DNA from: Saccostrea cucullata
Lineage: Eukaryota
Assembly (NCBI RefSeq): GCF_032062105.1
Contig: NW_026933545.1
Location: forward strand, 186,001 to 250,000
Length of the DNA: 64,000 bases
Reading direction: 5' to 3'
The notes beneath the pieces were generated by a model. That model did not search any database and was not told where the DNA came from. It worked only from the letters and a program-made list of their open reading frames with translations. Position numbers and translations under genes: made by a program. Shown in pieces: positions 4,002-32,194 of this stretch (positions within the stretch are counted from its first letter, which is position 1; every line of letters starts with the position of its first letter).

Positions 4002-7000
4002 TTATCTTGGAGTTGGAGCTGATGGATTGTTAAAAGATCTGAAAATAAAATTTAAAAAAATCTCATCAAAATAAAACTGTTAACATGATCAGCATAATAT
4101 TTTTTGAAATTGTTTTCAAAATATAAGCCCTACGTCTCATGATTGATCAGCCATTAATGAAATTGCAGACTCAGATATTGAAATCTCTTGTTTCAAGACT
4201 AAAGTATAACTCTAATTTAAATAAGATAAATCAAAAGAATTAATTAATTAAAAGAAATTGAGATCAACCTACAGTTTCAAGTCAAGACAAAAGAAATGGA
4301 CTTGTAAGAGAAGAGTGAGAAATTGATAAAGTTTGTCAAAAATGACTGTTTCTAATTTAAGTAAAATAATATCAAATAAAAATCTACTTATGAGAGAGAG
4401 AATCATTTTACTTAGACAAATTTCAAAAAACCCACTTCAATAGAGAGAATCTAATACGTGAATCATTTGTCTATACTTGTATATACATGTATATGAGAAT
4501 TAATCTACATTCAGGTCTTTCTATCTCCGCACTCCTTACCTATTCCGTTCCCTGTAAGTATTTTAAAATTATGAGGAACACACCCCTTTGTTTGTATTTC
4601 AATACAATATTAATCTAGAATCTGAGAAGTATTTGTATTACGTTCCTGTATTACGTGACTTTGGAATGAAAAAGTCGTAACTGCTATGGAAATCATTGTA
4701 CAACAAAAATTAAAATCAATTTTAAGTAGAATCGGATCAATTAAAAAAATTAAACCTGCTTTAAGCTTGTGTTTTGTTTCGTTGTTTTATCTATTATAAG
4801 CGGCATTTTAAAAGATCACCTTGTCAAAAATGCACTATTTGTATAACCCATCGTTCAAACAAATTGAATTTTAAAAATTCAATATTCTGTCTCATGTATT
4901 CCCTCGTTTATTTAGGTTAAGTTCTAGCTAGCTATCAAGAAATTTATATATAGATCCCGAACTGACATATTTGAAAAAAATCTTTTACCAACTATCAGCT
5001 TTGGATTTAATTTTAATTTTGTTTTTTACTTCCTATATTGTGTAAGGTTTTCCTTGAAAAAAATGTATATAACGTAAATTCAGATTGCAACGCATTCAAT
5101 ATTTTTCTAAGTTTTGTTTATTCAGAACAAACTTCAATTTTCTCTGTTTTTTTTTATGCAAATCAGTATTTTAAAAATATTTTAACATATAATCAATAGT
5201 TTTGAAAACAAATACAGCTTGCATTTTAAAAAAAAAAAAAGAAAAGAAAAACTCGTACGCATTGTAAAAAAAAAAAGTACCTAACATTGGACATTTGTGA
5301 AATGAAGTATGAGAAGAAGAACTGTAATCAAACTAAAAGTCTATAGAAACTAAACCAATTTTGATCAGAGTGAGAACTTTTAAAAATATCAGAGGTGGGA
5401 TCAAGCGTCATGAAGGAGTAAGCATCCACTCATCGTTATGTGTTCCTGGTAATGATGGGGTGAAAGGGAAAACCCAGAAACAATTCAATGTGAAAATAAT
5501 GGCCTAACAACTTGTACGAATATGTGAGACATTATTTGATTGTATTTGTTGACGAGGTCATTGTTTCTACCATAGAAAAATGCGAAATGTTGATTGCTCA
5601 TATCTGTGTGTCATTGCTTGTTGGTCAATAGCTTGCTTATCTTGTTTTAGCCATTTTTTGTACGTTGAACCATGCATGAACTCCATATGCAAGTGATAAT
5701 GGTATACATGCATTGCTACACAAATAAAAGAAGTACGATAGAAAAGTTGATGGTATTTCCTTTATCGAATAGTTTAGTTCTTATTTTGACATCAGTGCCC
5801 TTTTCCAGCAAAATTTATAAAAATTCAAACAATCAGACTTTGTGGTGTCTTTTATTTAGAGTTCATGGTATATACCGTATCAACATATGGATATGTACCG
5901 TACGTGAACATAATACAGTGTCTGCATTTATAAATATAAAGTCGTCGATTTATGAACCTGAAAGGCCGCAGTCACGACTCGTGTTGTCGACATGTTTTAA
6001 ATTTCAATAAAACGATTTTATGACTATTGTAAGTGCATTTGTATTTTACCTTTGCATAAAGTTTTCACTTCAAAAGCTACCAATGCAAAGTATTTGTTTT
6101 GGCTAGAAAATGTAATTGGTTATGTAGCTTTAGACTACCAAAAATTACCCAATGTGGTAAAGAAGAAATCAGTTCCCCTATTATTAAATTAATTTAAGCC
6201 AGATCGACAGGTACAGATTCTTATCTACGCAAATAATATCAAAGCATTAAAAAGTTATTAATTGGTAACAATTGAAGAATTCAGTTATTTTGAACAGTAA
6301 TTTATGTCATTAAAGATTGAAATAAAGCTCAGAAAAAGTTATTACCATTGTTTGGGATCAACTTTTGATGACTGTCGTGCATCACAAAAGATGACAAGAG
6401 CAAAGATAATTAAAACAAGCTGCAAAAATAAAAATTCAAGATTAACATTATTCTAACAAGAAAATTTTAAATTATTATTATAAGATTTTTCTTTACATGC
6501 TTATTGCTTATCTGAAAACTTTTTTTTATATAAATATTGTTATATATGTAATATGTAATATAGTATTGAAATAAAGTAAATTCACAATCTTTTAAGGATT
6601 TTTTTTTAACATTAAACATTGTGAACACATAGGTGACATGATACCCATAGTGTTGGCTTAATGTCACAATCTCTATGTATAGAAATGAATATAATGCTTT
6701 CTGTCACAATATTAAGTGTGTACTGGGCTTTCCTTAGTGTTATACCTGGAAGACTCCGCATCCAGCAATGGAACCTGCCACCAAAGCAACATTCCCCAGC
6801 AGCATATTATACACTTCATCAAAACAACTCTGTAATAAAGTGAAATATCTATTTTATAACTCTATAAGAAAACTCTTAAGTTTTTTTCCACTACTACGTG
6901 ATGTTGTAAGGAGGCTGGGGAGGAAAGTCAACAAATTAACCGTCAAATACCTTTTTTGATATGATATCATGGGTTATCAACTATCATTTGATAAAGAAAA

Positions 7001-18192: not shown

Positions 18193-20169
18193 AAAAAAAG
18201 AAGGTGGTATTTCTATTTATAGGAATTACAGATTATTCAAATTCTTTTTAAAGAAAAAAAATACCGCTCCTTTCTTCATGGAAATAAGGCTTCGTTCTCG
18301 AGAAAATGCCCGGGCAAAATGCCATTTTTGCATATCATTGAATTTAATAATACATGTATTGAATCTAAAAAGAGTCTTTTATTCTTATGCTTAATAAACT
18401 GAGTACCCGTGAATGAGCAACAGAGGTGAAGATAGTTTCTGACTTGGCCAAATAAATTGTGCATAAAATGTTTGAATACTTTTAGCATACCAATTTTAAA
18501 GAAATCTCGCCTACGCTAGCAGGTGATATTACGAGTCGATGTATGTAGCCGACATGTATTGTTTAATTTCAAATCTATTCCTGGAAGCGTTTAGATGCTG
18601 ACAAAGATGGAAAAAGAAAGGAAATCTAATGAAATGTCAAAAGAGTAACTGTATCCAAAAAAAATAATAATAATAAAAAAAAAAGAACAAAAAAAAAAAA
18701 AACACACAAAAAAACCAGCCATATCTTCGTCAGGTTTATAAAATTATTTGAAATAAAGTTTTTTTTTATTGAGTCATAGATATTCTTATTTCCTTATACA
18801 AAAAATGTATGAAAATCAGTTTTCTTATCTATAAGATTAATGAATTATTTCCATATAGTACAAACTGGTTCATGTAAAAATCTCATGTCAATCATTCGGC
18901 ATAAAAATTTCCCTTTTATGTCAACTGAAAACTGAACTGAAAACTACTTTATATTGATCAATTTTCGAACAGCAACTTTCACTAAGCTCTAGCGGGCATT
19001 TTCTTGCATTTTCAAAACAGTGATGACGTTTTCTTTGCTTTGACAACGCCTCGTTCTATTCATAAGATTTGAAAACCTTTAGATTAATAAACAATAAATA
19101 AGATATGCAAACTATGCAAAATATGCAACAGCTTATGACAAAGGTTAAATAAACTGACAGCCCTAACACCAACCGTTAAATAATTTTTGCACACGGTTAA
19201 AATTTTCAAAAGTAGCTTTGACTCCAAGGTGAAAAGTAAGCGTCCAAGGAAGAGCTTGTCACGATTACATGTGTAATATGAAACCCTCAGTTGTTCCAAA
19301 TCAGGCAAATGGTATAACCAAGGATCGATTTTGGTAGGTTAACCCCAAAAGTCAAAAAAATATTTGCAAGGTAAGGGTTTTTTCTGGGAAACAAACAATA
19401 GCTAAACAGAAAGATTGACAAGGCAAAAATTATCTGTTCCCGAATCTTCGATTACATGGGCATAAACACGCTGAATTTCAAGAAGGTGTAAAGAATGCTT
19501 GAGCAAATTCATAACAATGTACATAAAGTTACAAATAATACCCTTGGAAAAATATTAATCCTCCTTGCTCATAATACATATTACACGTTTAACAAATAAT
19601 GGGCTCAAACATCATGACATCAAATGGACATTCTGTCCCAGCGTTGTAGTTCACTTCTTATTTCTTGTCGCTAACCTTAACTAGCGGCTATTCTGTATTA
19701 AATTAACAGTGACATTTTCAGTAATGTTACTGCGTTAGATTTTTTTCCCACTCATAGCATAAGATTTGCCGTTTAAAGTCTGATGCACTATTAAATTTGA
19801 AATGTTAAATACATGCTAAGGACGTTTATAACATATAAGCAGTCTACGAAAAGTTAAATGCTAAAAATTACTATAATTTATTTTAATTAAATAGTTTATT
19901 GAAGGTCATCCCAGTTACATTTTATGAGATAATGAATTTAAAACCAAACACTGAAGAAAAGTTTAAATGGTGTACTTTAATAGGTAATAGTAAAAAAAAC
20001 ATCCATATTTGTACATTTGTGAATACAATATAATTGAAAAATTATTTATCCTTATTGAAGAATTATTTCTGTTATTTGTATCAAATATACAATATTTAAA
20101 CCCTTTTCTTCTGAAGTATCTTTTTCAAAAGCGTCAACATTTGTCTTCTCGGCATTTGAAGCTTTTTTC

Positions 20170-23100
20170 TCACTGCTGAAGTTCATGCTCTCTCTCCTCT
20201 ACATTCAAACTCGAAGACCTAAGCCTAGAGTCAGAAAGTTCCCCAATCACAGAGTCGTAACTCCTTGTGTTAATCATACCAGTACTACTGCTGAAATGTC
20301 CTTGGCGTGGAATGTTCCCCAAATGTGGTTTCAAAGCTGGAATACCTCTGGTATTATCCGCTCTGTTACTTCCGTCTATCTCAGTAAACACACCTTGTTC
20401 CTCCGGTTCTCTGACAGAGACAGCTTGACAATCGTTGGTCCGATTTTCTTGTGGTTCCTCATCTGATCGGAGACCTTGGATATTTGGATTTCTAATTGTA
20501 GTTTCATCTTCCTCAGATGATCGCTGGAAAAGAAGAAGGAGATGGTTGAAAAACTTTTTTTTTACTTTCAGCATATAAACACGATCAAGATGATATTCAA
20601 TACTTTCTTATTTTGGCAATATTCTGGAATAAATAGTTTACAATATTTAAACTTAAATACTAATTTATGTTTATGTAATGGATGCACTATATTTAATATT
20701 TTCAATCAGGTGCAATATCTCGGTCATAGTTCTTAGGTCAACATAACATCGAATTATTTTCTTTTAAACATGTTAAAGCAGACTTCTTTCTCTCTTTGGT
20801 GCAACATGTATGTTCTTAGCATTATTGCAAATGATTTGTTTCTCCTGCAGAACATGGCCGTGAGGGATTTCATTACTTCATGAAAAAAATTATATATCTC
20901 CAGTGAAAAGTTAAAAGAGAATATGTTCAGTGTATATTGCAATTAGATTACATATGAAAGGCATTAATTATACATGTATTTTATCCAATCTCAAATCCAC
21001 TGATAGAAATTACTAAATTCCCATACCCTCCGACGGTATAATTTAGACCTTCCGGTTGCTAAATTATTGTGAACTTCTCTATTATTTGTGCGATTGTTGT
21101 CGTCATAAGTAGGAAAGTCAGTGAAAGAAATTTCAGCCAATGGAGTACGAACGTCACTTCCGATAGTATTGGTTGATGCGTCAACACTACGACGGGAATA
21201 TGGTGGTGGATCATGAATTTGCGATGGGGGGTGATGTTCTCCCACAAAAGTTGGTGGGTACATCTGACCGTGTGAAGCGGGGTAGTTGGATGACTGATGA
21301 AAGGGATTATGGAAAACATGATTAGTATTCATTGGAAAACTGGAGTAAAACTGACCCATATGAGTTTGATATCCGTCATATGGCATAAGACCATGGTTTG
21401 TCTGTGTTGAGTAGGGGCGCGAGCTTTCAGGCATCAATGCATTCATTTGAAGATAGTTTGGGAATGGTTGCTGAGTTTGTATTTGCTGGGGTTGCATCAT
21501 CATGTTTCCAAAGATACCACCAACATAGTTTTGTGAGGCACTAGGAGTGTTCGAAACCAGTTGAGGCGTTCCTTGTGTTTGATGGAGGTTCTGAACAAGA
21601 TTTTGTACCGAAGGTATTTGGGCAGCACTTTGTTGGACAACAGGACAGTTATTGGAGCGAGATGCCAGACCACCTATTAGAGCAGAAATCGTATTATTTT
21701 GAGTGGGATTATTCGTTTCACTGCTCCCTCTCAAGTTTTGAACAAGAGAAGCTAAAGCTTGAAGACGACTGTTATTATTTCTTGCACCGTTATTGTTACT
21801 TCGATTATTCCTGTTGTTATTATCACCATCTTTATCGGTTTTGTTATTTTTGTTTCGACTGGTGTTGCTCGTTTTGTTGCCATTTTCATTTTTGTCTCTT
21901 TCACCGCGGTTTTTCTTTGAAGCTCGTTTATTTCTGTTCTTCTGTCCGTCTGTGTTGTTCTCGGCGTTTGTTCCACCGTTTGCTGAGGACGTCTGAGTAT
22001 TGACGCCTATCTGATTTATCAATTGCGTGGCTTGTTCTTCGTTCTCTTCTTCTTCGTCTTCTTCAGTGTCTGTTTCATTTTCTTCTTCTTCTTCTTTTCT
22101 CTTCTTCTCCTTCTCTTCCTTGGAAACAGCTCGTGTCAGCCAAAACGAGAAGAAAATTAGGGTCAACTGCATTAAATAATGATATACTTGTCAGTAAAAA
22201 TTACCTTGAAATTAAAAATCAAAACATGTTTCTGAAAAAAGCATGTAACTTTTACCTCAAATACTCCAACTGTTCCTAGACAACCAAAAGAAATTCCGTT
22301 CTGTTCTTCGATGATGTCCCACAAAGCTTTGTAGCAACCCTGCATATAAACATAAGCATCAATGTTTTGACACTTCAATTGATTATAATATATTCTTTTC
22401 TCCCTAGGATTTCCTTGTACATCATTTCAACATTCACATAGTATAAATATGTGTCTTTTATTTTACTTTTTATATAGTTTTGTATATATTTCACTGAGCT
22501 CAATAATTATATAATATTTTCTGGCTGTTTATGATTCATTAGAACACTGGTTGGCATAAATAATATTTTGTTTTCCCCTTTAAAAATGTGTGTTACTTGA
22601 TAAAACAGATTACCGTTAGGTAATTAGAATCTTCGGTGGTAGGTATCACTGCACAGTCTCCGCCGACGTCCATTTCTTCCGGATTTTTGCAACAAGAGAC
22701 TGGAGTTGTCAAAGTGACGGATAGGGTAATATTAAACTCGTCGACGTAAAAGTATTCCCGGTCCCAGATTAGACTCTTGTTGAAATCAGAGTAGTCCTCT
22801 ATTCCACAACACGACAACTGAAAAAGGCCAACCCAGGACTGATATATCGTCTTAATTCATTTCGAGAATTTCATTTCGTTATTAATGTAAAGCGTTGATC
22901 ACTCCAAATGAATATTTTACAATATGGGCACAAATAACTATTGTGAATTTAATTTACATGTATTTATTGAATATCTGCGTTACATATCTAATATACATTT
23001 TGTATCATTTAACAATGAAGAGTAAAGCTAAAATGATACCATTTACATTATTTTTGGAAGTTTTTTTTTTAAAACAATGAACCATTTAGATTATGTAACT

Positions 23101-24890
23101 GCTTCTAGAGTTGTACTAGAAATCTAGTTAATTTAATTGATTTCAAAATCAATACAGAAAATTCTTGGATTTTCTTTTTTCTTCATAATCTAAAATGACC
23201 GACTCCTTTTTAACGACCAGCTTGTGCGTGTTACTGAGTCTGATTGCAGCAGATTGGACATAAACCCTATCAGATTACCATGGACTTTGAGTGTGTGATT
23301 GCTCTATAATAGAAAATCAACACGCAGCATAAAGTGGTTCATTGTTCAAACTATATATAATATAAAAATCGAAGGAAAAGAACTTCCATGATCTTTCTCT
23401 CCACAGAATAAAAAAAAATCTTTAAACGAACATAAAATTAGAAGAAATTCTGTATTAGGAAGCAATTCAAAGAAAACCCGCTGAATTCAATTTCTACCCT
23501 TCTCCCCTTTGCTTCTCATCGAAAAGTCAGTTGTCAATAAGGATAAGAGATTCCTGTATTGAAACTTTCTGATCTGATAGTGCTAATGACACAGTAAGGT
23601 GCAAATTAGCATATTGATTATGTTTTATCTCTTCTGCTAGTCAGGTATCAATAATTTATTAATTGCAATTAATCAATTTTAGACTTACTCCGGACATAAA
23701 GAAATCAAAGGCCACAGACATGACGTCTGTTCCGTTGCCACCGACATATTGATTCTGGAGGAAACTCTGAAGAGATGGCTTCATGTAATCGTCTATCTGT
23801 AATACATATTTATTACATTACAATATAACTCATGTAATCATCTATCTGTAATACATATTTATAACATTACAATATAACTCATGTAATCGCCAATCTGTAA
23901 TACAAATTTATAACATTATATTACAAGGTAATTCTTAGAAATCGTGTAATCGTTTCACTGTAACACAAGGAAATCCTTTAAACTCATTTAATTTACCAGC
24001 ATCTGTCGTTATCACACATTCATTACATTACAATGCAATATAATTTTTAGAACCTGTATAATTGTTTGTCTGCAACACATATATTACATAACAATACAAT
24101 GTAATTCTTAAAACTCGTGTTATTGTCTCTCCATAACATACATATATTATATTATATTACAATGCAATATATTTTAGAACTCAAGCATCCATCTATATGT
24201 AAAACACAAAGCATTGCAATACAATGTTGTTCTTATTATCTATCATTTATTATAATATAATTTTAGTACATTTGTGATATTACCAAAAGTATTTTATTTG
24301 AGTTTTAGGGTATTTTGATCATTTATACGAAGTAAAAGTTAGACGGAAACCCCACCGGAGAGATAGACACATGAGCATATTAAGGATTTAACGCCTCACG
24401 TTTATCTTTGCAGGAGTCGTTTGTTTGCAATGGCCGATGAAGAGTAGGTCAAATATTTATCAATATTTTAAATTCTGTATATTTCTGATTGCCCATCTAG
24501 GTTTTAAATGTCAATGATATAAATAAATATATTACACCTGGTATTGTGTTTTTGTAGATATCTCAGCACAGTTGGATTGCACAAATTAATTAAGGTAAAT
24601 ATATTTGAGTTACATAAGTATTTTTGGGATAAATTAAATTAAAGGCAGATTAATGAATTAATTTCAGAGAGAACATTGGATGTCAATTTTGGATAAGTAG
24701 GTTTTGCTGAATTTGTCTACTTGAAGCGTTTATTGCCAATCTGCGGCGTTAATATACTTTAAGGTGCATAGTAAATGAATGTTCAAATTGATGATTTAAG
24801 TGACCAGTAACATATACATGTACATATACATATACATGTACTACAGACTTTTATCACCAAAACTTGAAGAATCGTTTCTTCAATTGTCAT

Positions 24891-24940
<50 letters not shown>

Positions 24941-26922
24941 CTATTGATATTGATTAATGGAAGTGAATTTGCTTAAGATATGATAATCTCACTAATATCA
25001 TCTTATGGACCAAATAAAAATGGGGGATAACACTTCACACTTACTTTTCCTTGATACCACTTACCAAATTTCTCTTTGTTATCAGAATGACAATAAATGA
25101 AATTTCTCCAGCAAGAAGAAGAATAAGCATAAAGCCGTACTGCAAATAAAAAGACACTAGTATAAAATAGAAGTTATAGAACACAATGTGTCCTTGTTGG
25201 TTAGAGTCAAAGAGTCAACAACTGCCATATATCCAATATTTACCACTGATTATACAGACCTTTAAAGAGTTAACTGCTATTTATTTTAAAGCATATATTT
25301 TGTCTTTTTCACAAAAATAGTTATACATGTATATCAAACTTTCGTTATTTTACCAAAATTAGGAGTGCTTTGATCTTTTTCTTGGCTCCAAGGATCCCGA
25401 TCCCGGCCACAATGGTCAACACCAAACCAATCGCAATCAGACCAAAAGCGGCATTCCCCACCAGAGCCGCTACATCTAGGCTAGAGAGATCCACCCCTCC
25501 TAATCCGCCCGTCATACTGGTCAAAGTATCTATCACCTTACCTATGACGTCATTGATGAGGTCTTTGGCAAATTTGACCAACATTCCTATCACCGCCATT
25601 CCTAGAGCAAGCAGCTAAAAACACCAGGCTTCTTATTACGTCGTATAAAAAGGAATAAGGATCAGAAACGGTTCTTTCTGAAAGGTTTGGGTTGGTTGTG
25701 AAGCATCTTGCTTAGCCAATGGCTTCTGGGCCGCCACTTTCCTCAAAACGATAGGTGTGGATCAGAAACCCTTGGCTAGCGAAGATGAATGAAGCGCAAA
25801 ACAATTTCTTTTCAGAATGAACCATTTGGTGTTTATGTCTTACTTAAGGTCAGATGATACAAACCATTTTTTCTTTGGATGAGACTTAATATCATCTAAC
25901 AGGTTTAGAAAAGTGGATAATTCTTTGAATTTTTTCTCCTTCGACTTGGAAAATGAAATAAACTTGGAAATATTAGTTAATACTTCAATATAATAACAAA
26001 TATAGACAAATCACAATCAGTAAAGGTTTTCAGATGAAAACAAATTTCAGAATATGTAAGCTTGGTGCTAAAAGTATAATACAAACTTTACAAAGATATA
26101 CCAAGCAAGGTAAATTTTACGAGGAAACGCAAATGGTGAAAAATCAGAAAAATCACAGAGGCTGATTTTTACCATTTTGCTTTTCCTCGTAAGATTCACC
26201 TGGCCTGGTATATTATTTAAAAGTTTACATTATACTTTAAGCACCAAGCTAACATATTCTGAAATTTGTTTTCATCTGTAAAACTCTATAGCTACTGAGT
26301 GTGATATGTTTTTGTTATGTTAGCAACAGCTAGCAAAGAAGATTCAATTAAAAAAAAATAAAAGAGTTGTTCACAGATCACGGCCAATTAAAGATGTATA
26401 TAGTGCTAATTAAGTTTAACATGAATATATAAGATACAAAGAAAACTTTTGAAAAGTATAAAGGTTTTAATAATAAAAATGAAAACCAGGCACAAAATTT
26501 TAACCATAAATACCTTTTTTATATTCACAGTTTCTCATAGAAGAATCTGTGAATATATAAAATAGGAGTCAAACAGAAAGTCATTTGTTATTTGACCAGC
26601 GTGTGTCTCCTCAAGAGTGTAGAAATTGTTCATATGATAAATCGGAGTAAATTAAGAGAATGATACATGAACATTATCAGTGATTTTCTTTGTGTTTACG
26701 AAAACGTATTTATTGAATGAACTTGAAAAAAAATCATTTTTTTTTTATTCATCATAGGAAGTTGTTTTGATACATTTTCGAGCAAGATTTCCATGTTACA
26801 TAAATTATACAAAAGCTTTTAAAATAAGAATTAAATTGAAATGAACGTAACCTTACCCCGAAAAATGAATTCAGGGTCATTAGACACCCCCTTCCACAGT
26901 TGGCCACGCTGTCCATTGCCAT
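20170..26922 (-). CDS. Tetraspanin paralog 2 with a very long low-complexity C-terminal tail (about 763 aa)
   Basis: Phase-0 GT-AG exons: 26922-26857, 25614-25354, 25139-25065, 23796-23689, 22817-22614, 22339-22256, 22166-21027 and 20523-20170. EC2 has CCG..PVSCC..C..GC. The 108- and 84-nt exon sizes match paralog 1. TM4 runs in frame into a 1140-nt exon. AATAAA at 19895-19900. Confidence 0.85.
23781..24230. repeat. 49-bp tandem repeat overlapping the exon-4 acceptor of tetraspanin 2
   Basis: tcatgtaatcgtctatctgtaatacatatttattacattacaatataac at 23781, 23830 and 23879, followed by degenerate copies. Confidence 0.85.
24894..24937. repeat. (TC)n microsatellite
   Basis: About 22 perfect TC units. 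Confidence 0.95.
25993..26318. mobile_element. Palindromic foldback MITE (~150-bp arms)
   Basis: cagatgaaaacaaatttcagaatatg.aagcttggtgct is mirrored by agcaccaagct.acatattctgaaatttgttttcatctg, with a ~14-nt loop near 26150-26161. Confidence 0.8.
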
Positions 26923-28841: not shown

Positions 28842-31800
28842 TTAGATGGCAGGAACAGGAATGCCTTCATCTGAAATTAAAACAAATTTCCATTTAATCA
28901 TTTTTTTCTAAAATTAAACTAAATACAAAAAGATGAAGATTATGAACAGTGTTTGACCCTAAAAAATCTATAAACAATACAGATCTGTGAAGAGAGCAAA
29001 AATCATTGTAAAGAGAGCAAAAATCATTGTAAAGAGAGCAAAAATCATTGTGAAGAGAGCAAAAATCATTGTAAAGAGAGCAAAAATCATTGTGAAGAGA
29101 GCAAAAATCATTGTAAAGAGAGCAAAAATCATGGACCTCTGGAAATTCCTGAGATGGGGTCATGTGCCCAGGAGGAGTAAGCATACTCTGTTGACCAGTC
29201 ACACCCGTCATTTTCCTTCAGTATTGATCACGTAAACGGAAAAACTTAGTGATAAAAACAAAGGCGTGACAATTGATAGGAAACAAGTCAACCAAACTAC
29301 GATTCAATGGAAAGTTAAATTTACTGATATGGTCATTCTAACGACCGTGGAATTTTCCAGTTGCATATATGGGTCCAACAATTGAAGTGAAAAAAATTAA
29401 TGGCCAAAAAAAATGCTAAAGAAGTCACTAGGTGTAAACCAAGAAGAGCTTGAGTGGGTAGAGGACATCCATCTTTAAAAAATCAAACGGCAAACTTACC
29501 TATCATAACTGCCTGTCTGACGGTTTTAGGACAACAAATGGGAATCATCTGGCCAGAGTACAAACTGCAGGTCCAACCAGGTTGGCAAGCATTGGGAATG
29601 TTTCGTTGACATGGCATTTTCCTCATGTCAGAGTTGGGGGTGATGTCACAAGCTTGATATTCAGCCAATTTATTGTGGCATAAAATAGCACCTTTCATCA
29701 TCTTGAGTTCTGTAAGTTGAAAAGGTTTAGACTGATGAGAAGTGTGATCAGAGCGCATGTAATTGTCTTTTGTTGGGTTACTTTTTACGTTTTACAAAAC
29801 ATTTAAAACTGTGAAGAAATCCCAAGAGAATAAGAATTATGCAAATTTTTCATATAATATCAAGAAATACAAAACATATATTTGAGAAACGCGTCTTCTG
29901 ACCTTCATCTCATGTAGATTTTAAAAACTTTGTTGCAAACAAATTGTTTTCACATTTCTACTATCAACTTACCTAATCCTTGGGCCATAGCATTAGCACG
30001 AGCCATAGTACCATCTGTCATCATTTTCATAGCTGTCTCATTTCCTGGAGCCGGAGGCACAATTCCATTGCAAACAAATTTTTTGGCAAACGGAGGAATT
30101 TCTGAAAGTGAAAGTTTTTTAAAATTTATTTTCAAAGAGCAATACCAAAAGTATAACTTTTGATTTTCTCCAAACTAGAATATCATAAATACATGTAAAT
30201 GCAAAATTTAATATTTTACCTATTCCAGCTTCTTGTGGATTCATTGCCTCTAAAACTCTTGTATTTATACGCCTTTGGAGCATTTGATTCATCATTCCGA
30301 CCAAAGGATTCGCTCCAGTCATGGAATTTCCTGACGTCCATGTGTTCATTCCAGCATTCTGGCCAGTTCCTGGCATCGAATTAGCATTCATGGTTGGCTG
30401 AAGCGATGGGAACTGAACTCTGAATAAATGTTCAGCTTGTCTTTCTGTCATCATTGACAATTGTTCCGGGGAAAGTTGTGATACCTCTGCAGGAACATTG
30501 TTACCGAACCATTGGCTGTATTCTGGATTAGCCGCTGGATTAGTACCTGCAGAGGATGTGGGGTTGCTGGCAGGTGGGTTATTGGCCTGGGCAGCAGTGG
30601 GTACCGGTGCTTGGGCCTTGCTATTTGAAGGTGTATTGGATGTCATGGCTTGCTGAGTTGGAGAGTTATTAAAGGTTGATTGAACAACTGGTATGGATGA
30701 TGGAACTACCACTTTTGGCTTAGTTTGAGGTGGTTCAGCTCTCGTACCTGTATTAGCATTGTTTGGCGAAGGTTCTGGTCCAACTGCTACAATTCTCGGA
30801 GCACTTTTTTCAGGTGGTGCATGTACTTTAATAGAGGGATGAAAACCATTCGATGATGATGGGAGCAGTTCTTTATTGGTCTTTAGCACCTGTCCTTGTC
30901 CTAGTGCACCTGAAATTTGTTGAGATAAAGATGTAAACGTCTTCTGTTTAGGTTGCTGGCTTGTTTTGGAATTGGTGTCTGTTCTTGATAAAAGATTTGG
31001 TCCTTGCTTTTTAAATAGGTCTTTCATGCTAAAACTGGGACCTAGTCCCAGGTTTAATATTGTTCGATGGTCGTTAATTCCACTTTTATTAGTTCTAACT
31101 GGCATATGACTGAGACTCTGGCAATTTATATCTGAAAATATACTAAATAAAGTAACTCCAGGGAAATAGCCTTTAAGAAGCATACAAGGAATATAAATTC
31201 TATGAGACCCCCTTTACCCTTTGAAAATGTTTTTTAAAATGTTCCTGTTAGTGGAAAATTCCGAATTATTGCCATATATAAATGGTCCTCTCTCAATGTA
31301 AGTTACGGTTTTCATTTTTGAAATCCATTTTGGATTATTACTTAACAATACAATGGATTTAAGTTTTCCCATAATAGCCCACTAAACAATAGATAATAGA
31401 GCAGTTCTTTTACCGCTGTTGTCTCATTTATCTTCACAAATATCAGTTGTTGTGGTAGTTTGTGTATAATTTTAATCGAGGAAAAGGACCAGTCGTAAAA
31501 TGCAACTAATGAGATAATAATGGTAGATATCGTTGTTTGTGCTGCAAGGCATACAGCAAGAATCTAACAAGTGGATTATTTTTAAATTAAAATGAGAATT
31601 AATTAAGGCTGGTTCTGGTTTGTATACGTCACTCCGTGTCATTTAAATAAGTTTACGCTGCTCTTGTTCAAAACAACTATTAATTTGCTTCCGGGATCTA
31701 ATTAATTTTCCTTGATGAGGAATTAGTGCGGAGAAAATATCAATTGTCTAGATTTGTGTAATTATAAGATTTTATTATATTTAGTGATCGTTTCTTTCTA

Positions 31801-32194
31801 TTTTATGACAGATTGATTGATATATTTGTTAGAAAGTTTTATTTATCCTTAGCTGAAAAAAAAATGTTTGTTAGTATAGTCTCTTTTGAGTAATACTGGG
31901 CAGTACTAGTATACAATGTATACTGTGTACAGAGTATATTTTTTCCTATCTAATATTCAAAATGTTTACTCTTGTGAAGCATTTACCTTAGATAAATTAA
32001 AAAAAACATGTACATGTATATATTTAAAGATTTACAATACTTGAAAGAAAATATAATTCAAACTTACAGAAAATAATGATTGATTATTTATACTCAAACT
32101 TCTTATGAAGTCTTCTTTATTATCTTTTAAAAGTCAAATAACAATACTTACATGTGAGACTGGACAATAATAAGATACACAAAGTTCCCTTCAT
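28842..32194 (-). CDS. Secreted 440-aa protein with S/T/P/Q/N/M-rich low-complexity region and C-terminal Lustrin-like cysteine module (candidate shell/extracellular matrix protein)
   Basis: Phase-1 exons: 32194-32152, 31131-30220, 30101-29973, 29709-29500 and 28870-28842. Signal-peptide-like MKGTLCILLLSSLTYINC-Q. Near the C-terminus: PCQRNIPNACQPGWTCSLYSGQMIPICCP. Confidence 0.8.
28987..29132. repeat. 21-bp minisatellite x7 inside a Penelope-like-associated repeat in intron 4
   Basis: gt[ag]aagagagcaaaaatcatt repeated 7 times. It explains the spurious KRAKIIV and CSLYNDF ORFs. Confidence 0.95.

What the first reader, a model, noticed from the sequence alone, without database searches (positions are those of the whole stretch)
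20170..22166. Tetraspanin with a ~485-aa modular disordered cytoplasmic tail (acidic, Asn-rich, Q/P/Y prion-like, PPxY)
Seen: the exon completing TM4 stays open for 1140 nt and splices in phase into a further 354-nt exon. The tail runs in order: K/E-rich then poly-acidic block, basic patch, NNNRNNRSNNN tract, Q/N/M/P-rich segment, Y/H/P-rich segment, PPPY (21198-21209), and Ser-rich basic sites (RRSVD, RSSS). Known: tetraspanin C-tails are usually only tens of residues, and PPxY binds WW domains (NEDD4 family, YAP). Inference: a tetraspanin converted into a signalling or condensate scaffold, whereas its neighbouring paralog kept a short tail.
Basis: partly seen in the sequence, partly recalled or inferred. 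Interest (0 to 1): 0.8.

Follow-up and report, generated by a model that had tools for sequence, protein, structure and literature searches.

The report
Oyster tetraspanin with giant disordered tail
A rock-oyster (Saccostrea) gene for a tetraspanin, a small four-pass membrane organiser, carries a cytoplasmic tail of about 485 residues, several times longer than any I found described; the tail is unstructured but kept in frame and under selection in three oyster species, so it is very probably real, though what it does and whether it is expressed remain untested.

Summary
On the minus strand an 8-exon, all-phase-0 tetraspanin gene (26922-20170) ends with exon 7 (22166-21027, 380 codons) and exon 8 (20523-20170, 117 codons plus TGA). 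Exon 7 begins with the second half of TM4 and runs on without a stop, so a complete TM4 cannot be made without reading into the tail.

The tail is conserved coding sequence. The syntenic S. echinata ortholog keeps every splice site. Its tail omega is 0.26 (p 4e-9), against 0.06 for the core. A more distant oyster contig keeps exons 6, 7 and 8 open at 49% and 40% identity while the introns are unalignable. Two partial duplicates in the same genome carry frameshifts at only about 11% divergence.

AlphaFold2 gives pLDDT 44-50. Conserved motifs are PPPY, two YxxPhi, RxRxxS and an acidic cluster.

My reading is a motif-bearing trafficking and ubiquitin-ligase docking tail, possibly condensate-prone. 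That function is inferred only.

No RNA evidence could be obtained. No annotated protein with this tail was found, although RefSeq Saccostrea and Magallana proteins are in the collection searched.

Verdict: new variant of a known kind; interest moderate.

The parts
26857..26922 (-). Exon 1: start codon, N-terminal cytoplasmic stub with two Cys, start of TM1 (with the polar Asn)
   Evidence: 95% aa identity in S. echinata
25354..25614 (-). Exon 2: end of TM1, small extracellular loop, TM2
   Evidence: weak Pfam Tetraspanin match; 97% aa identity in S. echinata
25065..25139 (-). Exon 3: TM3 with the polar Glu
23689..23796 (-). Exon 4: first part of the large extracellular loop
   Evidence: its acceptor lies inside a 49-nt x 2.8 tandem repeat
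22614..22817 (-). Exon 5: large extracellular loop with the CCG, PxxCC and further Cys
   Evidence: Pfam PF00335 E 6e-4, 20 bits, for this exon alone; one search hits the same place
22256..22339 (-). Exon 6: end of the large loop (GC) and first half of TM4
   Evidence: 82% aa identity in L001 and 96% in S. echinata
21027..22166 (-). Exon 7: second half of TM4 (14 aa) followed without a stop by 366 aa of tail
   Evidence: orthologs; omega 0.20-0.26
22035..22124 (-). Juxtamembrane K/E block, then the acidic cluster with Thr (CK2-type sites); encoded by a GAA/AAG trinucleotide run
   Evidence: AF2 extends the TM4 helix through it
21765..21941 (-). Basic, Asn-rich low-complexity block (exon-7 aa 76-134)
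   Evidence: composition conserved, sequence only 30-40% conserved
21576..21794 (-). Best-conserved mid-tail block (exon-7 aa 125-197), predicted as helices
   Evidence: 60% identity blocks
21237..21641 (-). Nearly uncharged Q/N/M/P/Y/H-rich block (exon-7 aa 176-310), prion-like in composition; holds the conserved YxxPhi at aa 238
   Evidence: 3% charged, 24% Q+N, a 76-residue run with no charged residue
21198..21209 (-). PPPY (PPxY, class I WW ligand motif)
   Evidence: same alignment column in L001
20170..20523 (-). Exon 8: last 117 aa and TGA
   Evidence: omega 0.37 against L001
20203..20301 (-). Conserved C-terminal block: GHFSxSTGM, YDxV (YxxPhi), GEL, RxRSxSLN (RxRxxS kinase-type site)
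19887..19986 (-). Polyadenylation-like signals 188-282 nt after the stop
19000..21454 (-). Stretch duplicated elsewhere in the genome as frameshifted fragments (break point inside exon 7)

Best explanation
This is a real protein-coding gene for a tetraspanin of about 763 aa in a Saccostrea oyster. Its C-terminal cytoplasmic tail has grown to about 485 residues of intrinsically disordered sequence.

Shown:
- The tail is in the same exon as the end of TM4.
- It is spliced in phase to a last exon.
- It is kept open and under purifying selection in three oyster species.

Inferred:
- The tail works as a string of short docking motifs held at the membrane by the tetraspanin core.
- A conserved PPPY would recruit NEDD4-family WW-HECT ubiquitin ligases.
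- Conserved YxxPhi signals and an acidic cluster would direct adaptor-dependent endocytic and endosomal sorting.
- A conserved RxRxxS site would allow regulation by phosphorylation.
- The charge blocks and the uncharged Q/N/M/P/Y block would add multivalent, possibly condensate-like self-association.
- The net effect would be to control trafficking, ubiquitination or multivesicular-body and vesicle sorting of the tetraspanin and its membrane partners.

My odds: tail translated as part of the tetraspanin, about 0.85; motif-scaffold mechanism, about 0.4.
For: Gene structure:
- ORF and splice phases.
- TM4 is split by an 89-nt intron, and its second half is contiguous with the tail. There is no alternative last exon in the 89-nt or the 503-nt intron.

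S. echinata ortholog, syntenic (L026):
- All exons and splice sites are kept. Exon 7 is open for the 229 codons that are held.
- Core omega 0.063. Tail omega 0.26, dS 0.43, Fisher p 4e-9.
- Differences at codon positions 1, 2 and 3 are 26, 21 and 49.

Distant oyster contig L001:
- Exons 6, 7 and 8 have the same boundaries, at 49% and 40% aa identity, with in-frame indels only.
- Introns are about 50% identical, which is unalignable. Omega is 0.20 and 0.37.

Internal control: two partial duplicates of the same DNA have three shared frameshifts at about 11-13% divergence.

Disorder: AF2 mean pLDDT 43.9 and 50.3; no Pfam domain.

Motifs at the same columns in the window and in L001: PPPY, YLQM/YQQM, YDSV/YDKV, RLRSSS/RIRSTS.

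Ligase present: the genome encodes a 4xWW-HECT ligase.

Known precedent: PPxY in the disordered tail of the four-pass protein connexin43 binds NEDD4 and ITCH and drives lysosomal sorting (PMC11006747).
Against: - No transcript evidence could be obtained.
- No annotated protein with this tail turned up in a profile search of 1.84 billion representatives. The collection does hold RefSeq proteins of S. cucullata, S. echinata and M. gigas.
- The S. echinata locus table lists no called gene over the orthologous exons. The gene therefore seems unannotated, which could mean very low or restricted expression.
- There is a single PPxY, in a Pro-rich stretch. Short motifs arise easily in disordered sequence, and conservation is shown in only one distant species.
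- The end of exon 7 and exon 8 were not seen in S. echinata.
- The exons were never joined, so the full protein was not scanned or folded as a whole.
Confidence: 0.6

Rival explanations
1. The main role of the tail is physical rather than motif docking. The opposed acidic and basic blocks and the uncharged Q/N/M/P/Y block would drive multivalent self-association or co-condensation with a charged cytosolic partner. That would cluster tetraspanin-bearing membranes or vesicles, as the tail of synaptophysin does with synapsin. This reading is not exclusive of the best explanation.
For: Composition is conserved better than sequence in the charged and Asn-rich blocks. There is a 76-residue run in the window, and a 107-residue run in L001, with no charged residue. 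A 21-nt repeat expansion is tolerated in L001. For precedent, the charged cytoplasmic tail of the four-pass protein synaptophysin is at least partly responsible for its co-assembly with synapsin into vesicle condensates (PMC9884207, PMC11260120).
Against: No prion or phase-separation predictor was run, and there is no experiment. Several short blocks are conserved in sequence, not just in composition (PPPY, the C-terminal block), which fits docking motifs better.
Confidence: 0.2
2. The long tail is a minor or conditional isoform. The usual product would be a short-tailed tetraspanin made by splicing out most of exon 7 (an intron inside the exon) or by early polyadenylation. Alternatively the tail ORF could be translated mainly from an internal start as a soluble protein.
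For: No RNA data. The gene seems unannotated in RefSeq Saccostrea. Another note of this scan reports alternative last exons in a different tetraspanin of this genome (s1-701172, unchecked).
Against: Purifying selection acts along the whole tail, including the part directly after TM4. No alternative TM4-completing exon is seen in either intron. A short isoform would still need a stop that the frame does not offer for 380 codons.
Confidence: 0.12
3. The tail is not functional. It would be an open frame kept by chance or by composition, or a recently dead gene.
For: Low-complexity sequence; no domain; no annotated relatives.
Against: Stop-free probability 1e-10 to 6e-14. Omega 0.2-0.37 with p from 3e-4 to 1e-27. 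Third-position excess of differences. The real neutral copies of the same DNA are frameshifted.
Confidence: 0.03

Closest known systems
Canonical animal tetraspanins (Pfam PF00335: CD63, CD9, CD81, CD151)
   Same: Four TM segments, a small and a large extracellular loop, CCG and PxxCC cysteines, polar Asn/Glu/Glu in TM1, TM3 and TM4, and cytoplasmic N- and C-termini. CD63-type tails also carry YxxPhi sorting signals (my own knowledge). A review states that tetraspanin tails bind AP3, PKC and Rac and direct endocytic trafficking (PMC7617763).
   Different: Their tails are described as short (PMC7617763). Here the tail is about 485 aa, roughly two thirds of the protein, with its own block architecture and a PPxY.
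Long-tailed tetraspanins already described: fungal Tsp2 and Tsp3, and peripherin-2/RDS
   Same: Tetraspanins whose C-terminal tail is longer than usual, rich in polar or charged residues, and in peripherin-2 intrinsically disordered with an inducible helix (PMC2278132; the peripherin-2 work is in the reference list of PMC7617763).
   Different: Those tails are 66-110 aa (PMC2278132) or about 60 aa (my own knowledge). The oyster tail is four to eight times longer, and no sequence relation was found.
Connexin43 C-terminal tail and the PY-motif membrane adaptors NDFIP1/2
   Same: A four-pass or small multi-pass membrane protein with a disordered cytoplasmic tail. The tail carries PPxY plus YxxPhi signals and Ser phosphorylation sites, recruits NEDD4 or ITCH, and directs lysosomal sorting (PMC11006747).
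   Different: Unrelated folds and families. Binding is shown experimentally there and only inferred here. The oyster tail is about three times longer than that of Cx43 (my own knowledge of the Cx43 tail length).
Synaptophysin and synaptogyrin (four-pass vesicle proteins)
   Same: Four TM segments with a low-complexity cytoplasmic tail that drives vesicle clustering in condensates with synapsin (PMC9884207, PMC11260120).
   Different: MARVEL-type proteins, not tetraspanins. Their tails are much shorter. No partner is known for the oyster protein.

Membership tests
Tetraspanin (PF00335) | Four hydrophobic transmembrane segments with a small loop 1 and a large loop 2 | tested here: met
   Hydropathy exon by exon: TM1 (end of exon 1 plus start of exon 2), TM2 (exon 2, aa 50-78), TM3 (exon 3), TM4 (end of exon 6 plus start of exon 7); none later
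Tetraspanin (PF00335) | CCG motif and further conserved cysteines (PxxCC, a Cys before TM4) in the large loop | tested here: met
   Exon 5 reads CCG, then PVSCC, then a further Cys. Exon 6 starts with GC. All are conserved in S. echinata at 91-96%
Tetraspanin (PF00335) | Polar residues inside TM1 (Asn), TM3 (Glu/Gln) and TM4 (Glu/Gln) | tested here: met
   Read from the exon translations: Asn in TM1, Glu in TM3, Glu at the exon 6/7 junction in TM4
Tetraspanin (PF00335) | Pfam score over the gathering cut-off (32.1 bits) for the whole protein | tested here: inconclusive
The six-frame genome scan hits the same place at 25 bits. The joined protein was not built
Tetraspanin (PF00335) | Short cytoplasmic tails (typical of the family, not strictly defining) | tested here: not met
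   The tail is about 485 aa. This is the point of the finding
PY-motif ligands and adaptors of NEDD4-family ligases | PPxY in a cytoplasmic, accessible segment | tested here: met
   PPPY at 21198-21209 in a segment with pLDDT under 50, conserved in L001
PY-motif ligands and adaptors of NEDD4-family ligases | Binding to a class I WW domain that depends on PPxY | not testable with these tools
   Needs a pull-down or ITC. A WW x4-HECT gene exists in the genome
Prion-like / low-complexity domains | A long Q/N-rich stretch with very few charged residues | tested here: met
   Exon-7 aa 176-310: 24% Q+N, 3% D/E/K/R; a 76-residue run with no charge. The same holds in L001
Prion-like / low-complexity domains | A score over threshold in a trained predictor (PLAAC/PAPA), or experimental condensation or aggregation | not tested
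   No such predictor is on hand

The most novel reading that the evidence does not exclude
An oyster-lineage tetraspanin that is missing from current annotations has fused the tetraspanin membrane organiser to a 485-residue prion-like tail bearing PPxY. One protein would then both nucleate a membrane-attached condensate and recruit NEDD4-type ligases. That would make it a self-contained platform for sorting cargo into endosomal or extracellular vesicles, a role that in other animals needs a tetraspanin plus separate adaptors.
Probability: 0.2. Interest if true: 0.7.

Novelty: new variant of a known kind. Interest (0 to 1): 0.5.

Why it matters
Tetraspanins are usually thought to act through their membrane and extracellular parts, with cytoplasmic tails described as short (PMC7617763). 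A conserved tail of about 485 residues would show that the family can also serve as a membrane anchor for a large disordered signalling or sorting module. It would give a natural test case for how disordered tails tune tetraspanin microdomains, endocytosis and vesicle release. It also flags a conserved 8-exon gene that current oyster annotations seem to miss. That matters because oyster tetraspanins such as the CD63 homolog have been studied in oyster cellular immunity (PMC7387653).

Tried and rejected
- Predicted complex of the PPPY segment (window:21147-21254:-) with a WW domain of the genome's own WWx4-HECT gene (L024:1441-1578:-). The tool was busy twice, then returned 'no answer', score 0.06, controls not run. 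This is no evidence either way.
- Profile search of 1.84 billion representatives with the exon-7 alignment. Only P0001 is a true hit. The other 19 hits match the NNLGVTQ heptad repeat contributed by L001.
- Word search with the exon-8 alignment: nothing.
- Metagenome contig scan: nothing.
- ESM Atlas by features: no usable hit.
- PDB sequence search with exons 5 and 2: nothing meaningful.
- Exact look-ups of the window's own ORFs: not in the collection.
- Loci for S. cucullata and M. gigas through the neighbouring gene: not on record or withheld. As a result the end of exon 7 and exon 8 of S. echinata were not seen.
- The species of runs SRR25445049, SRR25445068 and SRR25445072 could not be identified. 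The only paper with neighbouring accessions concerns other runs.
- Idea rejected: the 354-aa disordered ORF upstream (30119-31183) is a second tail or a paralog. It has no similarity and belongs to a separate annotated gene.
- Idea rejected: the fragments on C3665 and C11828 are the donor of the tail. They start inside exon 7, include the intron and the 3' flank, and share frameshifts, so they are derived partial copies.

Full report
**1. What is in the sequence**

On the minus strand I read an eight-exon gene, every exon in phase 0:

| Exon | Window coordinates | Content |
|---|---|---|
| 1 | 26922-26857 | start codon, start of TM1 |
| 2 | 25614-25354 | end of TM1, small loop, TM2 |
| 3 | 25139-25065 | TM3 |
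| 4 | 23796-23689 | start of large loop |
| 5 | 22817-22614 | large loop with CCG |
| 6 | 22339-22256 | end of large loop, first half of TM4 |
| 7 | 22166-21027 | second half of TM4, then tail |
| 8 | 20523-20170 | end of tail, TGA |

- All eight have AG acceptors and GT donors.
- By count the product is 763 aa.
Every search, scan and fold was done exon by exon by reference, so the full-length protein was never scanned or folded as one chain.
- A 380-codon stop-free run has a chance probability of 6e-14 at the window's composition and 1e-10 at the exon's own composition.

**2. It is a tetraspanin, and the tail cannot be separated from it**

- Hydropathy gives four TM segments and none after residue 14 of exon 7.
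- The large loop carries CCG, PxxCC and two further Cys.
- TM1, TM3 and TM4 hold the usual Asn, Glu and Glu.
- Exon 5 alone matches Pfam Tetraspanin at E 6e-4, and the genome-wide six-frame scan hits the same place. The Pfam cut-off for the whole protein could not be tested without joining.
- TM4 is split by an 89-nt intron. Its second half lies in exon 7 and runs straight into the tail.
- The neighbouring paralog at about 6.3-8.3 kb has its intron at the same place inside TM4, but stops 13 codons after the membrane.
- I saw no alternative TM4-completing exon in the 89-nt or 503-nt introns.

**3. Which organism**

- The last word search, spent on the disordered ORF upstream (30119-31183), returned named RefSeq proteins: S. 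cucullata at 94-95% identity to the window's exons, S. echinata at 68-72%, and Magallana gigas at 35-38%.
- The window is therefore from a Saccostrea species near, but not identical to, the RefSeq S. cucullata.
- This agrees with earlier notes of this scan that call the genome an oyster.

**4. Is the tail coding? Three lines of evidence**

(a) S. echinata.
- The locus fetched through the neighbouring gene (L026) holds the syntenic ortholog. Exons 1-6 are 91-97% identical at the protein level, with every splice site kept.
- Exon 7 is open for the 229 codons that fit in the locus.
- With dS about 0.42, which is not saturated, the core has omega 0.063. The 214 tail codons have omega 0.26, with Fisher p 4e-9.
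- Differences at codon positions 1, 2 and 3 are 26, 21 and 49.

(b) A more distant oyster.
- A 2517-nt genomic contig, found identically in at least eight runs of one project, holds exon 6, intron, exon 7, intron and most of exon 8 with the same boundaries. The species is not identified.
- Exon 7 is 49% identical and exon 8 is 40% identical, and all indels are in frame. One of them is a 21-nt x 6.9 repeat.
- The introns are about 50% identical, which is unalignable.
- Omega is 0.20 for exon 7 and 0.37 for exon 8, with saturated dS.

(c) An internal control.
- The same genome holds two partial DNA-level copies of window 21454-19000, on C3665 and C11828. They are 78-89% identical to the window and 95-98% identical to each other.
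- They have no tetraspanin core beside them.
- At only about 11-13% exon divergence they share a 4-nt deletion, a 1-nt deletion and a 1-nt insertion.
- Neutral drift breaks this frame quickly; the gene copy and its orthologs have not been broken.

**5. What the tail looks like**

- It has no Pfam domain.
- AlphaFold2 with the two-sequence alignments gives mean pLDDT 43.9 for exon 7 and 50.3 for exon 8.
- The only helices predicted are the TM4 helix running on through the K/E and acidic block (residues 2-52), helices at 125-197 at pLDDT 55-69, and a weak helix in the conserved C-terminal block.
- The blocks are:
  - K/E, then an acidic cluster encoded by a GAA/AAG run.
  - A basic, Asn-rich block.
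  - A conserved helical block.
  - A 135-residue block with 3% charged residues and 24% Q+N.
  - PPPY.
  - A basic-Ser junction across the exon 7/8 boundary.
  - A conserved C-terminal block.
- Motifs at the same alignment column in the window and the distant ortholog are PPPY, YLQM/YQQM, YDSV/YDKV and RLRSSS/RIRSTS.
- Sequence identity is highest in the TM4 part, the helical block, aa 221-240, aa 261-280, the PPPY block and the exon-7 end. It is lowest in the Asn-rich block, where composition rather than sequence is kept.

**6. How it most likely works (inferred)**

- By tetraspanin topology the tail is cytoplasmic.
- The best-supported reading is a membrane-tethered string of short linear motifs.
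  - PPPY would act as a class I WW ligand for NEDD4-family ligases. The genome has a WWx4-HECT gene on C18071.
  - The YxxPhi signals and the acidic cluster would serve clathrin-adaptor sorting.
  - The RxRxxS site would allow kinase control.
- The precedent is connexin43. It is a four-pass protein whose disordered tail carries PPGY and YxxPhi signals, and NEDD4 and ITCH use them to send it to lysosomes. NDFIP2 is a membrane adaptor with PY motifs (PMC11006747).
- The charge blocks and the uncharged Q/N-rich block also fit a multivalent, condensate-type role, as shown for the charged tail of synaptophysin with synapsin (PMC9884207, PMC11260120).
- None of this was tested here.

**7. Cautions**

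- A profile search of 1.84 billion representatives found no annotated protein with this tail, although RefSeq Saccostrea and Magallana proteins are in that collection.
- The S. echinata locus table lists no gene over the orthologous exons.
- The gene thus appears to be unannotated. That raises its novelty, but it leaves open that expression is low or restricted.
- Some records near the window's genome may also be withheld by the tools, so absence is weak evidence.

**8. Comparison and novelty**

- A review describes tetraspanin cytoplasmic tails as short (PMC7617763).
- The 'long' tails of fungal Tsp2 and Tsp3 are 66-110 aa (PMC2278132).
- A conserved tail of about 485 aa is a new variant of a known kind.
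- It is a member of the tetraspanin family by its hallmarks, and it departs from the family in tail length and tail content.

Noticed in passing
G000:C3665:167198-169924 (L012 5200-7935) and G000:C11828:21763-23009 (L011 7755-9009): Two partial DNA-level duplicates of the 3' half of the gene (window 21454-19000: end of exon 7, intron 7, exon 8, 3' flank). They are 78-89% identical to the window and 95-98% identical to each other, share frameshifts, and have no core exons nearby. They are pseudogene fragments; the two may be haplotigs of one locus.
   Followed up: partly
window 29456-32194, minus strand: The upstream neighbour is a separate gene for a disordered protein of about 440 aa. RefSeq names its relatives 'uncharacterized LOC134238580', 'circumsporozoite protein-like' (S. 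cucullata) and 'POU domain class 6 transcription factor 2-like' (S. echinata, M. gigas). These names probably come from low-complexity matches. It identified the genus as Saccostrea.
   Followed up: partly
window 23781-23918: A 49-nt x 2.8 tandem repeat overlaps the acceptor site and the first 16 nt of exon 4, so two extra copies of the acceptor with the exon start lie just upstream as possible decoy splice sites.
   Followed up: no
window 28986-29132: A 21-nt x 7 tandem repeat (96% matches) that is open in frames on both strands (heptad peptide repeats), between the tetraspanin and the upstream gene.
   Followed up: no
L001 1213-1357: The distant ortholog has a 21-nt x 6.9 in-frame repeat (NNLGVTQ heptads) inside the tail that the window lacks. 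It produced all the false hits of the big profile search.
   Followed up: yes
window 6344-6829, minus strand: The neighbouring tetraspanin paralog splits TM4 at the same position. After 13 tail codons it reads TGG TAA, where GT of a possible donor overlaps the stop.
   Followed up: partly
G000:C18071:170014-182633, minus strand: A NEDD4/ITCH-type gene with four WW domains followed by HECT exons. Several WW and HECT loci occur in near-identical pairs on different contigs (C13287/C2290, C10361/C11781), which suggests uncollapsed haplotigs in this 1.17-Gb assembly.
   Followed up: no
L026 (S. echinata JAVQLB010000025.1, 22957807-22981233, reversed): The table of called genes lists only the neighbouring gene, although six well-conserved tetraspanin exons and the start of exon 7 lie in the locus. 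The tetraspanin seems to be missing from that annotation.
   Followed up: partly
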